Source of the DNA: Phallusia mammillata
Taxonomy: Eukaryota
DNA length: 64,000 nucleotides
Direction of reading: 5' to 3'
NCBI GenBank assembly: GCA_965637545.1
Contig: OZ281494.1
Location: forward strand, 23,126,001-23,190,000
In this document: piece after piece, positions 41,201 through 46,121 of the stretch
Numbering within the stretch: position 1 is the stretch's first letter
How the letters are laid out: each line of letters opens with the position of its first letter
Translations under genes and position numbers: made by a program
The notes under the pieces: generated by a model
The model's input: the letters and a program-made list of their open reading frames with translations, nothing else
What the model was told of the DNA's origin: nothing
Databases searched by the model: none

Positions 41201-44200
41201 GAAGGTGCCACAAGTGATGACTATAAAAGTGCTGCATATAGTTACCTAGTGGTCAGTGCACTTATCTTAAAGCTTGCTTGCTTAAAGTTTATAGGATAAC
41301 CTTTTTCTGTATACTTTCCACAATTTTACACTTCATTGAACTTTTCCAAATCTAAAACCTAATCACTTTTCATACCACAAATTATGACTGAAAAATATAG
41401 TTTGTATTTGGAAACAAGAGTGCAATTTGGTACTTAGATAGAAATATGCAATTGGCCAAAACAATTCACTTGGCCAAATGATCCAGCACACCTGACCCAT
41501 ATACATACATTAAAAAACGTCCTGGGTTTTAACCCCGTGAAAAAAATGGATGCAAATACACAAAAAAACGTGTTTGTGGCCCCCATTGATTGTTTTCAAA
41601 TAAATATTTGGCAGTCAACATGTTCAGATTATTTTGTGTTTATAAATGTGTTTTAGAATCTTGTTTATTACTAAAAGTAGTTGTAAAATACAATTTAAAC
41701 TTTCAAGATCACATTATTCATCCCCAATACTCACATTACATTCTACTTAATGTGCATCGACTAGTTTAAAGTATATACTGATGGTTATAAAACCCTTAAA
41801 ATGCTTGTGGTTTGATTTTTTTAAATCATGTAAGCAGTGTTTTTTTAAGGTGTTTTGAGGGACCGAAACGGTCCCCCAAATTTCTTCAGCGGTTTCCCAA
41901 AATTTGCCAGTAGCCTAATAAATAATTCGTTTAAGCAAATATGGCTATTTTTTGGTATTTAAATGAAACACGTGTGGTCACCCAAACCAAACCTTAAAAA
42001 AAAACCTGCATGTAAGCATCTTCGTGGATATAAGATAAATCTTTGAGATCACCATATTGTTTTTATACTTGATGTTTGAAGGCAAGTGATGTAATGCTTT
42101 GGCATGTCCCCAATGATGTTAGTATATCACAATGGAGCAGTCAAGCATTTTTAAAATACTACACCAGTTCGGGATTTTTAAGTTCTTATGGTGGAACATT
42201 GCAGATCTTGTATTCCAAACATTTTCCCCTAAAAATGAACAACGCATCAGGTGAGAAGCTGAAACAACATTGTAATTATATGTCCAAAAATATGTTAGGT
42301 GAGGCAAAGCTTGATCTTTGATTTGATTGTTGGATTTTAAACTTTGCCTAAACTTGTTTATTTTTAGCTTTTCCTTTAGGAATTTTTTTAAATTTAAGCC
42401 ACAATTGTTGCAAAAGTAAAGTACAGCACTGGCCAAATTACATTACCATTTTTCTCAATCTAACAAAAACTGAAGTACTAGACTGCTGACCTTGTTATGA
42501 CCCAGAGTTCTTTCCCTGCTTTTATTTTATACTGCAAAGTGCAAGAGTCTGTTTTAGGATTTTATTACATATAGAAATAATTGTGCTGCTATGAAAATTG
42601 GACTATCTACTTTTCTTTGTGCTGTGAAGGTGACCTGACTCCAGGAATGTCCAATCTTATGCAGATAGTCAATGATACTGCTGCCAATATTGCAGCTGGT
42701 ATTTCTGGTTTTTATTCATATCGCTTTGATGACTCTGCGTACATGAGAATCAGTGATGGTGGCAATGACATGTATGATGATGGAAATAGGGTAGGAAAAA
42801 ATGTGCTATTGTGTAGCAATATATAGAATCGGAAGAGCATGTAGAGTTTGATAGTAAACATATTATTTTATGTCATTAGGTGCACTATCAAATTGGTAAT
42901 GAACATTGGAAACCTGTTCAATATGGCAAAACTTATTAGTAAGTAAAACCTTGCTTTGCTATCAATAAAACTTAGTTTACTATTAAATGAACCCCAATAC
43001 CTTGAATGTGGTCTTTTCGGGGTTTAGGCCCATTTTTAAACTGGGTTCATCATGTTACTATGTACGTTAAGATGCTATCTTGAATGTTTTTCAGTGACCT
43101 TGGGTCTGGGACACAGGTTAGTAGTATAATTAATCACCCATTTATTATGCTGATGTGGATTGGAAACAGTGGGGGCTCTGTGGATACCTTTGGTATTAAG
43201 GTTTGTATTTGTCATAGTCTATTTTAAAAAATACTTAATTTTGATAATAATATTTCTTTCTTGTTGCTCATGAAAATCGTAATTTAAGAATTGTAATGGA
43301 GTTTTGGCATGGGTAGGATTTGATGTTTGTTTTGTGTCTCATTGCAATCAATGAGGTCAATTTTGCCTTTATGGAACTGTTCATTTCAACTCATCAGATT
43401 CCACTTGGTTGATGCAATGGCGCTTAAGTTTGTTGCTCAGGAATGTGCAAGTGGTCGAGACGGGATTAGAACAGTCAACCTTATAAACACAACGCAGTCA
43501 CAAATATATGAGTACCAAAGCCGCAACGGCAAAAATCGGCTCCTAAATACGATATTTAAATGTTCATACTTCAAGTAAAGCATACATACACTTACTGATT
43601 TGAATCAGCTTTGATCAACACGATATTTTGTTCAATGTGTGAAGCCGCACAAGCGTCTTGAAAGAGCTTTAGATTGGCGACTACACTGACGTTAAAGTAG
43701 AAATAAGGTTTTGTTAAAAAAGATACACACAAAGGAGTAGATAAACTTTGGAAAATTTTAAAATTCTGCACTTAGACAAAAGTTTTTTTTTTGTTGAATC
43801 CCACTTACGATTTGTCGCTTTGTCGCATTAAATGGTTTTTAATCTAACACGTAGGAAGGTTGAAGCAAGTTTTCTTCACATTTCGTTCAAAAAAGTGCGG
43901 ACCACAACATATAGAAAAAAATTAAAATCCACAATTTGCAACACACCTACACAAACCTTGTGCTATTTTTTTTTACCTTATGTTTTCCAGGTACAATCTG
44001 GAACTGGGGCGGACAGTGGTGGTTTAACAGCGTCCTACAGCTCTCAGTTTGTGTACAACAACATAACATGCCGCTATGAATCTTACAATGTTTATGGTGT
44101 GGCTGATCCATCAATTTGTGAAGTGTATTTTGCCTGTCACGATGTAACGGTGGGTTTTATTATTTTTGCAAGGTTTTAAGTTCAAAAATCGGACTGTTTG

Positions 44201-46121
44201 TTTGTTTTTTCGTGCTACATTGTTCCCCGGAATACGATTAAATATATAAACATGTCATCATTTGTTTAGAACTGGGGATCACAACCATTTAACAACTTGG
44301 TTCGAGGCTCGTGGAGTTCGTCAACTGATAACTTAGTTAACAGCGTAAACATCGACGGAAGCCCTCAAAATGTCCTCATGGGCTACATGCTTCTTTCCAA
44401 GTAGGTTTTTGAGGCCTCACTAAAGCATTGTTGCATTGGTTTCAAAACCGAAACGCCATCACGCATACTTAATTCTCATTACAATTTCACTTGCTGATTT
44501 TTTTCAGGGGAAGTGGAGTGCAAGTCAGAGAAACGGAGGTCGCCTCTTCCATACGATTACTTTTGGGTGGATTGGCAGGAATGGGCACAGTTGCTGGTTC
44601 GATCGCTGTTCATGTTTTTGTTACCTTCACCCGTGTGATAAAATAGTAGAAAATATACCACTCTATTGTCGCGTCCAGGAGAAACAGAAGGATTATTAAA
44701 AACTTTAAATCACAAAAACATCTTGTCTTGTAGATGTAGACTGTTCAAGACCTGAAAGTATCAGCGCTAGTGTCTCCTACATCACGGGAAATAACGATGA
44801 CGTCATGGCCCGTATTCCGCCTAACCAGAAGGCAAGAGTAACTCCTGGTTACATTCACTTCCGACCTGTTGACCCGATGGGCATGCCCAACGCTCTTTGC
44901 CCTGGTGTAAAGTAAGTCTCACATTTTGATCGAAACCAAGAGCACGGCCAGCACTTCTTATTACAGATGCTTAACGGCCATGTAGTTAAAATGATATAAA
45001 ACCATGTAAGACATGTGTACAGAACGGCTTGTCATGTCCTCCGTTTATTTGCACGCCACAAAGTGAGCTAATAGAGCAGAAGTTTTGAGTTATAGAGAAT
45101 GTTACATTAATGTAGAAAGTTTCTAGCTTCATTTTTTTTTTATCTTATACCAATTTAAAGTGGCCAAAATGGGTTGATTGCAACGTCAGTGCTTATAATG
45201 CTGTATTTGCCCTGTCTATTCGTTGTTTTGCAGAAATCGAACGGTTGACCTTTGGTCCATGTGGCTTAAAAAAATCCTTATTTGGATATGCTTGCTTAAC
45301 AATAATATTTCGCGTTAAAATAGTAAAAGTAATCTGACATCTTAGGTTAAGTCGATAAACTCCTTTTATGTAATTCAATGTCAAGCATGTTTTGAGTCTT
45401 CTTTTATTTTATGATGCAAATATATATGTGTTTTGTTGTGAAGATCATCTGCTTGTCGTCAGCAGTCGGTATGCATCGGAGGAATCAAGACACCTCCAGG
45501 TCCATTATCTGACACATGTGGCGATTTTTCAGGTAAGCTTTCTAGTCAAATTTTGTTTGTGAGCGAGAAAAATGAAAGCTCACCTTCGCTATTCAGTAAA
45601 GCTACTACACAAGTACTTACAGTACAAAACCTTTGTTAAATACCGATGGATGGCGTAAAGAGCGCAGTTATTTAAATTAACCGTAAGACAGGGATAGGGA
45701 CTTTATTTAACACAAAGAACTAGGTTTCAGGTTGTTAATATTATTATTACTAAACCTCAGACAAACCCTACACGCCCTAACCTCCGGATTTTTTTTACAC
45801 AAACTGCATTAAAAATACTTGCGTGCGCCACTTACCGGGGTTTAGCAAACTTATGTACTGTGAGTTCATTAGTAGCTCTACTAGGCTACCTTGCTATCCA
45901 ACCTGTAAATGTGAGTAGTTTTTGTTTGCTATTTTGTACAGGGCGGTCGAAACAAGCCGCAAAACAGTACGATTACAAACCACAAATAATCCTTTTGAAA
46001 CTTGTACGTTTGTCTAGGTTGGCGTGGTGGGGCAAACGACAACCCGACAGACACAACGCCAGATGGTTCGGCAAGATCCAAAAATGATGTCAAGTCCACG
46101 ATTCTTATATTTACCCGCTAG
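38211..46121 (+). CDS. Collagen-intelectin paralog B: same architecture as paralog A, including the ~235-aa inserted module
   Basis: 16 exons: 38211-38363, 39393-39464, 39690-39744, 40276-40394, 40686-40818, 41160-41251, 42082-42250, 42630-42790, 42880-42938, 43095-43200, 43991-44149, 44270-44400, 44508-44596, 44734-44911, 45444-45532, 46018-46121; [62 protein letters not shown]; intron phases match paralog A. Confidence 0.92.
38539..38999. mobile_element. hAT (Charlie-like) MITE in the first coding intron of paralog B
   Basis: TIRs CAGGGGTCACTAA / TTAGTGTCCCCTG; TSD TACTAGGC / TACTAGAC (1 mismatch); subterminal GGCCCGCGG-type motifs. Confidence 0.85.

What the first reader, a model, noticed from the sequence alone, without database searches (positions are those of the whole stretch)
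42630..44596. Intelectin domain split by an exon-shuffled ~235-aa module (ISDGGxDMYDxGN) in both collagen-intelectin paralogs
Seen: in both genes the intelectin sequence stops after K(Y/H)(Y/F)PL.. and resumes at xCSR..(V/A)xVx(F/Y). In vertebrate intelectin-1 this is the contiguous YPVKYGEG/KCWTDNGPVIPV segment. Six extra exons lie between (B: 42630-44596, 705 nt; A: 16658-14426, ~708 nt). They carry shared motifs ISDGGxDMYDxGN, [30 protein letters not shown], WSxxTDNL and DGSPQN.LMGY.LLS. The block is bounded by phase-1 introns on both sides, the classic signature of a shuffled extracellular module. Inference: a second, probably Ca2+-binding (Asp/Gly/Asn-rich) domain was grafted into a surface loop of a collagenous intelectin. 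That would give a ficolin-like oligomeric pattern-recognition molecule with a new head. I recall collagen-bearing intelectins from invertebrate chordates, but not this split architecture.
Basis: partly seen in the sequence, partly recalled or inferred. Interest (0 to 1): 0.88.

Follow-up and report, generated by a model that had tools for sequence, protein, structure and literature searches.

The report
Microbe-type domain nested inside collagen-intelectins
Two neighbouring sea-squirt genes encode collagen-stalked relatives of the sugar-binding immune protein intelectin, each with an extra, unnamed domain spliced into the middle of the lectin fold. That domain is otherwise found in bacterial and viral proteins, and this layout is expressed and conserved in sea squirts but has not been studied.

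Summary
Both head-to-head paralogs (gene B on +, gene A on -) encode collagen-stalked intelectins. In each, six extra exons (705 and 708 nt), bounded by phase-1 introns, interrupt the lectin domain at the same loop.

- **Expression:** RNA contigs from four studies join all gene B exons without skipping. A public Phallusia mammillata protein equals gene B letter for letter.
- **The insert:** it is one complete copy of an unnamed ~230-residue domain with no Pfam, NCBIfam or PDB sequence match. It is predicted to fold alone (pLDDT 90) as a galactose-mutarotase-like beta-supersandwich between two helices.
- **The intelectin halves:** in the model they re-form a full intelectin fold (Z 31 to XEEL and hITLN-1).
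- **Exon shuffling:** the same six-exon cassette (phases 1-0-2-0-0-2-1) builds tandem arrays and CUB/Sushi/VWD mosaics in other ascidians. Intelectin-embedded copies form one clade, which points to one ancient insertion.
- **Relatives elsewhere:** in the searches run, relatives appeared only in bacteria, phages or giant viruses, and a few protists.
- **Ligand site:** intelectin's canonical Ca2+/diol residues are replaced.

Glycan binding by the insert, Ca2+ dependence and complement activation are inferred, not shown. The scan had already met this architecture at other loci of this genome. No paper on it was found.

The parts
38211..38402 (+). Gene B first coding exon: signal peptide and a Cys-rich 'VDMGxCxCMC' segment. 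The 3' boundary was not mapped.
   Evidence: Open frame. The same N-terminal motif is present in orthologues P0083-P0086. RNA was not checked here.
39390..39745 (+). Gene B collagen-like stalk: two short exons (about 39390-39464 and 39690-39745) with about 10 G-X-Y triplets. Boundaries were read by eye.
   Evidence: Translations. Orthologues carry a Pfam Collagen match (P0011).
40290..40394 (+). Gene B exon for the start of the fibrinogen-related/intelectin domain. Boundaries are approximate.
   Evidence: tblastn with P0084. The loose end of the RNA contigs just before 40686 reads the end of this exon (table 7).
40686..42250 (+). Gene B intelectin N-terminal half: exons 40686-40818, 41160-41251 and 42082-42250. 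The last exon ends in phase 1.
   Evidence: Exact map to P0088, RNA joints, and alignment to solved intelectins.
42630..44596 (+). Gene B nested module: six exons (42630-42790, 42880-42938, 43095-43200, 43991-44149, 44270-44400, 44508-44596). Total 705 nt, phases 1>0>2>0>0>2>1, corresponding to P0088 residues 128-363.
   Evidence: Module HMM match. Fold prediction.
44734..46121 (+). Gene B intelectin C-terminal half: exons 44734-44911, 45444-45532 and 46018-46118, followed by the stop codon.
   Evidence: Alignment to XEEL and hITLN-1, with the ligand-site residues replaced.
16896..19873 (-). Gene A upstream part: signal peptide and Cys-rich exon (about 19777-19691), collagen exons (about 18652-18461, containing PGKPGP), and the intelectin N-terminal half ending at 16896 in phase 1.
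   Evidence: Open frames, tblastn with P0083 and P0084, and the sequence.
14426..16658 (-). Gene A nested module: six exons (16658-16495, 16202-16144, 16008-15903, 15403-15245, 14952-14822, 14514-14426). Total 708 nt, with a GC donor after the last exon.
   Evidence: Exon-by-exon alignment to gene B. No RNA check.
14141..14321 (-). Gene A first exon of the intelectin C-terminal half. It begins in phase 1 with the N-F-N-C-S-R segment.
   Evidence: Sequence and open frame.

Best explanation
**Shown.** Genes A and B are divergently oriented paralogs. Each encodes a secreted protein made of a signal peptide, a Cys-rich segment, a short collagen-like stalk and an intelectin domain. One surface loop of that domain carries a complete extra domain, which corresponds to the loop after about residue 194 of human intelectin-1.

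The extra domain is one copy of an unnamed family of about 230 residues. Its hallmarks are I-x-DGG-x-DM[YF]D-x-[22 protein letters not shown] and GY.LLS. In ascidian genomes it is a six-exon cassette with phase-1 borders. It is also used in tandem arrays and in CUB, Sushi, VWD and trypsin mosaics.

**Inferred from exon maps and trees.** One such cassette was dropped by exon shuffling into a phase-1 intron of an ancestral intelectin gene. This happened before the three ascidian orders diverged, and before the collagen-stalked and membrane-anchored forms separated.

**Predicted by AlphaFold2.** The module is a beta-supersandwich held on a pair of N- and C-terminal helices. It is joined to an otherwise intact intelectin fold by low-confidence linkers.

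**Inferred, not shown.** Three observations point the same way. The residues aligning with hITLN-1's 'NTEHH' and 'PEA' segments are replaced in all split intelectins; from my own recall these segments hold its ligand-binding Ca2+ site. The module's fold resembles carbohydrate-handling accessory domains of glycosidases. Its relatives sit in bacterial surface proteins and next to viral tail genes. I therefore think the nested module is the recognition surface, probably for glycans. The intelectin fold and collagen stalk would then act as the oligomerising scaffold of a ficolin-like multivalent pattern-recognition molecule.
For: - **Architecture and expression:**
- **Same layout in other ascidians:** 16 proteins, the named ones from Styela, Clavelina, Ciona intestinalis, C. 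savignyi and Phallusia.
- **Module autonomy:** 7 and 8 tandem copies in P0001 and P0002; 3 copies with CUB in P0004; Sushi plus 2 copies in P0006; Sushi, trypsin, VWD, C8 and TIL plus 2 copies in P0016.
- **Cassette conservation:**
- **One clade of intelectin-embedded modules:** SH-aLRT 93 and 99.
- **Fold:** the module alone has pLDDT 90. The whole protein has pLDDT 84, with Z about 31 over 240 residues to XEEL, lamprey LSVL and hITLN-1 across model residues 1-485. Residues 127-363 match N-terminal domains of GH94, GH65 and GH116 at Z 8-9.5.
- **Ligand-site replacement:** 'NTEHH' becomes 'RQQSV' and 'PEA' becomes 'PGP'.
- **Microbial relatives:** type IX secretion system (T9SS) multi-domain proteins, with the module also found in 77 bacterial loci; large phage-like contigs next to sheath and tail genes; 21 IMG/VR contigs including giant-virus MAGs.
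Against: - No experiment or computation here shows binding of any ligand or metal.
- The supersandwich match is middling (Z at most 9.5, Foldseek TM at most 0.35 against PDB). The tool's own note says a best Z of 7-8 is common for models without a real match.
- Such domains in glycosidases are often structural rather than sugar-binding.
- The intelectin part could bind ligands through a different site.
- Gene A's splicing rests on sequence alone.
- Trees were 'quick' searches of very divergent sequences.
Confidence: 0.6

Rival explanations
1. The intelectin fold remains the lectin, using a non-canonical site. The nested module has another job, such as spacing or oligomerising the heads, or docking a host partner such as a protease, a cell receptor or mucus/tunic matrix.
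For: The intelectin fold is fully retained and well conserved (invariant columns). In other ascidian proteins the module forms long tandem arrays with CUB, Sushi and VWD domains, a pattern typical of matrix or mucus proteins. Supersandwich domains of glycosidases are frequently non-binding (my own knowledge).
Against: The residues aligning with the 'NTEHH' and 'PEA' segments, which I recall as the Ca2+/ligand site, are replaced in every split intelectin aligned. The module's most conserved residues form an Asp/Gly/Asn-rich loop shared with bacterial and viral copies. That fits a conserved small-ligand or metal site better than a lineage-specific protein partner.
Confidence: 0.25
2. The insert is not a separate domain. 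It is a lineage-specific expansion of an intelectin loop, or a gene-model or assembly artefact.
For: None beyond the prior expectation. Pfam finds nothing in the individual exons.
Against: Spliced RNA contigs from four studies contain it. The same unit occurs in proteins without any intelectin part, and in bacteria and viruses. It is predicted to fold alone.
Confidence: 0.02
3. The cassette is an optional, alternatively spliced unit. Skipping six phase 1-1 exons would keep the frame and rejoin the two halves of the intelectin domain, so the nested form could be a minor isoform.
For: The block is symmetric (1-1). Both paralogs have an unusual donor at its 3' border: GTTCGA in gene B and GCAAGT in gene A.
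Against: No 42250>44734 joint appears in any of four runs, and every contig carries the block. The public cDNA-derived protein also carries it. Contigs can hide rare isoforms, so this is not excluded.
Confidence: 0.1

Closest known systems
Intelectins / X-type lectins (human intelectin-1, Xenopus XEEL, lamprey LSVL; PDB 4WMQ, 5ZC0, 7E1E)
   Same: The GGGWTLV-type fibrinogen-related start is shared. So is the whole fold: Z about 31, rmsd about 2.1 A over about 240 residues, with 36-41% identity.
   Different: The domain is interrupted by a nested domain of about 235 residues. The residues aligning with the 'NTEHH' and 'PEA' ligand-site segments are replaced. There is also an N-terminal collagen-like stalk.
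Ficolins and collectins (collagen-stalked oligomeric pattern-recognition lectins)
   Same: The order is signal peptide, Cys-rich N-terminus, G-X-Y stalk, then a globular fibrinogen-related head. Gene A and several orthologues carry PGKxGP in the stalk. As far as I recall from the MBL/ficolin literature, this is the MASP-binding type of motif.
   Different: The head is an intelectin fold with a foreign domain nested in it. Gene B lacks the PGKxGP motif. No link to complement was tested.
N-terminal galactose-mutarotase-like supersandwich domains of glycoside hydrolases and phosphorylases (GH94, GH65, GH15, GH116, GH63)
   Same: They are the best structural matches of the module. The top match is Z 9.5 with 179 residues aligned at 3.7 A (5h3z_A 14-268). 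Almost all of the top 50 belong to this fold class, and ESM Atlas gives TM about 0.5 to GH65N-type clusters.
   Different: There is no sequence relationship (6-10% identity) and no Pfam GH65N hit. The module has its own flanking helices and no catalytic domain is attached. The Z values are in the range where only a common arrangement may be shared.
Unnamed module family in bacteria, phages/giant viruses and protists (for example P0112, a type IX secretion system (T9SS) protein; P0157 and P0150 on phage-like contigs; Guillardia theta XP_005835695)
   Same: They share the motifs (I-x-DGG-x-DM[YF]D-x-GN and GADG.G) and the length. Identity is 24-30% over nearly the whole module. BFVD models of uncharacterised Caudovirales proteins match with TM 0.62-0.74.
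   Different: These copies are free-standing or sit in prokaryotic multi-domain surface proteins. They have no introns and are never nested in an intelectin. All are unannotated.

Membership tests
Intelectin (X-type lectin) | Fibrinogen-related N-terminal segment with the GGGWTLV motif | tested here: met
   Exon 40686-40818 scores 20.3 bits on Pfam Fibrinogen_C, just under the 22-bit cut-off. Orthologues pass the cut-off. phmmer matches to XEEL, hITLN-1 and LSVL.
Intelectin (X-type lectin) | Complete intelectin fold | tested here: met
   The AlphaFold2 model of P0088 against 5zc0_A, 7e1e_A and 4wmq_B gives Z 30.8-31.1 with 239-241 residues aligned at rmsd 2.1-2.2 A, spanning model residues 1-485. 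This is a prediction, not a solved structure.
Intelectin (X-type lectin) | Ca2+-coordinating and ligand-contact residues of the exocyclic-diol site. In hITLN-1 these lie in the 'NTEHH' and 'PEA' segments; the residue numbers N260, E262, H263 and E274 are from my memory of Wesener et al. 2015. | tested here: not met
   The aligned residues in gene B are R, Q, Q, S, V and P, G, P. All 16 split intelectins lack the N-x-E-H pattern, while all vertebrate rows keep it.
Intelectin (X-type lectin) | One contiguous domain of about 250 residues | tested here: not met
   236 residues (P0088 128-363) lie between segments that are about 12 residues apart in XEEL.
Ficolin/collectin-like collagenous lectin | Collagen-like G-X-Y stalk between an N-terminal Cys-rich segment and the globular head | tested here: met
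   Gene A has G-X-Y runs at about 18652-18461. Gene B has about 10 triplets at about 39400-39745. Orthologue P0011 gives a weak Pfam Collagen match, 19.3 bits against a 27.2-bit cut-off.
Ficolin/collectin-like collagenous lectin | MASP binding and complement activation | not testable with these tools
   Only a motif is seen: PGKPGP in gene A and in P0024, P0082, P0083 and P0085. It is absent from gene B.
Galactose-mutarotase-like supersandwich (GH65_N / GH94_N type) | Structural match that stands clearly above background | tested here: inconclusive
   Best Z is 9.5. The rest are 6-8.5 but come almost exclusively from this fold class. Foldseek against PDB gives TM at most 0.35, and ESM Atlas gives TM about 0.5.
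Galactose-mutarotase-like supersandwich (GH65_N / GH94_N type) | Sequence membership in the corresponding Pfam families | tested here: not met
   No Pfam or NCBIfam hit for the module in ascidian, bacterial, viral or protist members. A profile search of PDB sequences was blank.
Unnamed DGG-x-DM[YF]D module family (defined here) | Full-length match to the module profile, including the invariant I, D, G, D, N and G positions | tested here: met
   P0088 (identical to gene B) matches the local module profile over about residues 126-360. Orthologous split intelectins score E 1e-75 to 1e-107 on the first profile. Invariant columns are listed.
Unnamed DGG-x-DM[YF]D module family (defined here) | In ascidians: a six-exon cassette with phases 1>0>2>0>0>2>1 | tested here: met
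   Gene B, gene A by sequence, P0034, P0020 and P0006, and seven copies in P0001.

The most novel reading that the evidence does not exclude
The module entered the tunicate lineage by horizontal transfer from a marine virus, bacterium or protist. It then acquired five introns and spread as a six-exon, phase 1-1 cassette through extracellular proteins. In the intelectins it took over ligand recognition from the original Ca2+/diol site. A chordate immune lectin would then be using a microbial or viral surface-binding domain as its sensing head.
Probability: 0.3. Interest if true: 0.85.

Novelty: new variant of a known kind. Interest (0 to 1): 0.68.

Why it matters
Intelectins are studied as compact, single-domain lectins that read microbial glycans through one Ca2+ site. 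Here a whole family in the closest invertebrate relatives of vertebrates has kept the fold and replaced the residues at that site. It has also nested a second, unnamed domain in a loop and mounted the assembly on a collagen stalk or, in other members, a membrane anchor.

This offers several things:
- a natural domain-insertion experiment in a lectin;
- an unusually clear case of multi-exon cassette shuffling, with the same phases in every context;
- an uncharacterised domain family that spans bacteria, phages, giant viruses, protists and tunicates, and could be defined and tested for ligand binding;
- a possible new branch of the lectin-complement toolkit in ascidians, which are filter feeders.

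Tried and rejected
- **Pfam on single exons** gave nothing meaningful. A 17-bit Phage_spike_2 hit and tailspike hits in PDB at E about 0.6 were treated as chance.
- **PDB sequence searches** with exon i1 and with the 33-sequence module profile were blank.
- **The search for homologous proteins** with P0011 residues 228-468 returned only the query itself, because of the word-index limit.
- **Foldseek against PDB** gave only TM of 0.35 or less. I relied instead on the exhaustive VIA search.
- **The ESM Atlas feature search** gave cnidarian fragment clusters at 0.89, below the tool's trust level. The Atlas's own model of P0088 is poor (pLDDT 0.39), so its structure rows were ignored.
- **tblastn of phage-type member P0157** against GenBank phages found no match.
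- **Papers not held:** Wesener et al. 2015 and Hayashibe et al. 2017. The hITLN-1 residue numbers therefore rest on my memory. PMC9434060 partly backs them, naming positions 260, 288 and 297 as binding-site positions.
- I did not build or search a joined protein for either gene. Gene B was handled through the identical public protein P0088, and gene A exon by exon.
- **Geometry not measured:** the distance between the module's termini, and its position relative to the trimer axis and the old ligand site, could not be computed because model coordinates are not returned.
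Full report
**What is in the window.** The region is AT-rich eukaryotic DNA with short exons. On the + strand, gene B runs from about 38.2 kb to 46.1 kb. 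On the - strand, gene A runs from about 19.9 kb down to about 14.1 kb at least; I did not map its last exons. The two genes are therefore head to head.

Both begin with a signal peptide and a Cys-rich 'VDMGxCxCMC' segment. Short collagen-like G-X-Y exons follow, and then an intelectin-type fibrinogen-related domain.

**Checking the observation.** The gene B exon ending at 42250 aligns to XEEL chain positions 123-170, and equally to hITLN-1 and lamprey LSVL. The exon starting at 44734 aligns to XEEL 183-231. In solved intelectins about a dozen residues lie between these segments. In gene B there are six exons totalling 705 nt.

A public protein turned up in the homology search: P0088, 'Uncharacterized protein LOC100185757' of Phallusia mammillata, 485 aa. 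It contains every gene B exon translation letter for letter and in order. An exact protein-to-genome map gave these exons:
- N-terminal half: 40698(internal Met)-40818, 41160-41251, 42082-42250
- insert: 42630-42790, 42880-42938, 43095-43200, 43991-44149, 44270-44400, 44508-44596
- C-terminal half: 44734-44911, 45444-45532, 46018-46118

The insert enters and leaves in phase 1.

**RNA support.** Sixteen runs guessed to be RNA hold about 20% of the sampled words of the stretch, roughly the share made up by exons. I laid contigs of four of them, from four studies. They join all twelve exons with GT..AG introns and no mismatch. Single contigs of up to 1653 nt span from the first intelectin exon to the last coding exons. 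No joint skips the block.

**Gene A.** Gene A has the same six exons (164, 59, 106, 159, 131 and 89 nt, total 708). All have AG acceptors and GT donors except a GCAAGT donor after the last exon. The A and B inserts share 107 of 233 residues (alignments). Gene B was handled through P0088 and gene A exon by exon.

**The insert is one copy of an autonomous, mobile domain.** I searched 1.84 billion representative proteins with a profile of the fourth insert exon from A and B. It gave 74 hits. All hits that carry an organism name are ascidian: Ciona intestinalis, C. savignyi, Phallusia mammillata, Clavelina lepadiformis and Styela clava.

I then built a local profile from the insert of seven split intelectins. 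It matches whole units of about 230 residues (profile positions about 7-233 of 241) in several other proteins:
- seven times in tandem in Ciona P0001
- eight times in Phallusia P0002
- four times in P0003
- three times next to CUB domains in P0004
- twice after a Sushi domain in P0006
- twice at the end of a Sushi/trypsin/VWD/C8/TIL mosaic in P0016
- twice in an Ig-like, probably membrane-bound protein, P0010/P0079

The unit's borders coincide with the borders of the intelectin insert. Neither Pfam nor NCBIfam recognises it in any member tested. A profile search of PDB sequences was blank.

**Exon shuffling.** Exact exon maps show the same six-exon cassette in split intelectins of all three ascidian orders: Phallusia gene B, Styela P0034 and Clavelina P0020. 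Exon lengths are about 150-164, 56-62, 97-112, 153-162, 128-134 and 68-95 nt. The phases are 1>0>2>0>0>2>1.

The cassette also appears in genes with no intelectin part. It occurs twice in the Clavelina Sushi protein P0006 and seven times in the Ciona array P0001, where occasional phase 1-1 linker exons separate the copies. Internal introns at identical positions in every context mean the unit moved as genomic DNA with its introns, between phase-1 introns.

In two maximum-likelihood trees ('quick' searches) the sixteen intelectin-embedded modules form a single clade inside a single ascidian clade. SH-aLRT support was 93 then 99 for the embedded clade, and 96 then 93 for the ascidian clade. Members with an N-terminal hydrophobic anchor (P0020, P0025, P0087) are sister to the rest, which include the collagen-stalked ones. 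All split intelectins share the same insertion point. One ancient insertion is the simplest reading.

**Fold.** With a 33-sequence alignment, the module alone is predicted at mean pLDDT 90 and pTM 0.90. It has an N-terminal helix, a sandwich of about 12 beta strands and a C-terminal helix. The DGG-x-DM[YF]D loop is the least confident internal part.

An exhaustive structural search puts N-terminal domains of glycoside phosphorylases and hydrolases on top. The best is 5h3z_A residues 14-268, at Z 9.5 with 179 residues aligned at 3.7 A. GH116, GH94, GH65, GH15, GH63, aldose epimerases and YidC P1 follow at Z 6-8.5. ESM Atlas gives TM about 0.5 to GH65N-type clusters.

These scores are middling. 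The consistent fold class makes 'galactose-mutarotase-like supersandwich' a reasonable label, but not proof of relationship or function.

The whole P0088 model has pLDDT 84 and pTM 0.76. It superposes on XEEL, lamprey LSVL and hITLN-1 at Z about 31 over 239-241 residues, spanning model residues 1-485 against chain residues 72-313 of hITLN-1. Residues 127-363 independently match the supersandwich set. So in the model the two intelectin halves close up into a normal intelectin domain, with the module hanging from a loop on low-confidence linkers.

**Relatives outside animals.**
- *Bacterial genomes.* A pattern-plus-tblastn scan of one genome per bacterial or archaeal species returned 89 confirmed matches, of which 77 distinct loci were kept. 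They come from Bacteroidota, Verrucomicrobiota, Planctomycetota, Acidobacteriota, a cyanobacterium and others. Identity is 24-32%, often over nearly the full module.
- *Host proteins.* The three examined are 1800-2900-residue proteins with type IX secretion system (T9SS) sorting tails. They also carry HYR, Ig-like, LamG, C-type lectin or subtilase domains.
- *Phage-like contigs.* Free-standing 270-300-residue versions sit on large phage-like contigs. One is next to sheath and tail-region genes. Another lies among DNA polymerase, chaperonin and glycosyltransferase genes. A third is near a Peptidase_S74 gene.
- *Viral collections.* Twenty-one IMG/VR contigs carry the module, and the four best are giant-virus MAGs. 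BFVD holds uncharacterised Caudovirales proteins matching the model at TM 0.62-0.74.
- *Protists.* Copies exist in Guillardia theta, Pyramimonas parkeae and a dinoflagellate.

In the trees the ascidian clade lies on the viral and protist side of a well-supported split from the bacterial-genome copies. Its nearest neighbour is unresolved. No other animal appeared, but my searches were not designed to exclude that.

**How it probably works.** Aligned to hITLN-1, gene B has 'RQQSV' where hITLN-1 has 'NTEHH', and 'PGP' where it has 'PEA'. As I recall from Wesener et al. 2015, these segments hold the Ca2+-coordinating and ligand-contact residues. PMC9434060 confirms positions 260, 288 and 297 as binding-site positions. 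PMC8185196 describes the Ca2+/exocyclic-diol mechanism. All sixteen split intelectins lack the pattern and all vertebrate rows keep it.

The module's most conserved residues form an Asp/Gly/Asn-rich loop shared from bacteria to ascidians. My preferred reading is that the module is the recognition surface, probably for glycans and possibly metal-dependent. The intelectin fold would then be its scaffold, and the Cys-rich and collagen N-terminus would make it multivalent, as in ficolins.

Gene A and several orthologues carry PGKxGP in the stalk; gene B does not. As far as I recall from the MBL/ficolin literature, this is the MASP-binding type of motif. All of this paragraph is inference.

The main rival keeps recognition in the intelectin part and gives the module a structural or partner-docking role. 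A minor rival is that the cassette is optional, because skipping it would keep the frame and both paralogs have an odd donor at its 3' edge. No skipping junction was seen.

**Known or new.** The proteins are in public databases as 'uncharacterized protein', 'Fibrinogen C-terminal domain-containing protein' or 'Cortical granule lectin-like'. Full-text searches for intelectin with Ciona, tunicate or ascidian terms found no description of a split or nested architecture. The most relevant paper, Hayashibe et al. 2017, is not held.

After finishing my own analysis I consulted the scan's notes. The same architecture had been reported at other loci of this genome, including double-module and membrane-anchored forms. 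Those notes reach the same conclusions on microbial and viral relatives. They are AI notes and not independent proof.

This window adds the collagen-stalked pair. It also adds two results I obtained here and did not see in those summaries: conservation of the cassette in non-intelectin genes, and the single clade of embedded modules.

**Verdict.** Ca2+ binding, glycan binding and any complement role are untested. I rate it a new variant of a known kind (intelectin/ficolin-like lectins) that carries an as yet unnamed domain family.

Noticed in passing
window 41722-42095 (intron of gene B): RNA-contig depth is very high here (up to about 580 in X1, against about 10-25 on the exons). Many contigs run on into unrelated sequence at 41831-41843 and 42003-42009. 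This looks like a repeated element or a separately and highly transcribed unit inside the intron.
   Followed up: no
window 45632-45835 (intron between exons 45444-45532 and 46018-46118): This is a second intronic stretch with RNA-contig depth about 17-23 and loose ends at 45632 and 45673-45675. One X1 contig joins 42003 to 45632 with non-canonical ends (AC..CC). It is probably copies of a dispersed repeat rather than splicing.
   Followed up: no
window 44597-44602 (gene B) and 14425-14420 (gene A): The intron that closes the cassette has an unusual donor in both paralogs: GTTCGA in B, which RNA contigs show to be used, and GCAAGT in A. This might matter for regulated inclusion of the cassette.
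   Followed up: partly
window 38211-40400 versus public protein P0088: The public Phallusia protein identical to gene B starts at an internal Met (window 40698). It therefore lacks the signal peptide, the Cys-rich segment, the collagen stalk and the first intelectin exon, all of which the window shows upstream. The database entry is 5'-truncated.
   Followed up: partly
L082 8001-8819; L083 8001-8891; L089 8001-8975; L002 3303-4895: Free-standing module proteins lie in large phage-like or virus-like contigs. Neighbours include sheath/tail-region genes, a DNA polymerase with chaperonins and glycosyltransferases, and a Peptidase_S74 gene. This suggests a role in virion surface or host attachment.
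   Followed up: partly
L054 2850-9041; L012 1752-10586; L005 887-6346: Bacterial carriers of the module are giant proteins with type IX secretion system (T9SS) sorting tails. They combine it with subtilase, LamG, C-type lectin, HYR and Ig-like domains. Some carry two or three module copies.
   Followed up: partly
A3/A5 alignments: P0020, P0025, P0087: Some split intelectins replace the signal peptide and collagen stalk with an N-terminal tail plus a hydrophobic segment, which looks like a type II membrane anchor. Their modules form the sister clade to the remaining split intelectins, which include the collagen-stalked ones.
   Followed up: partly
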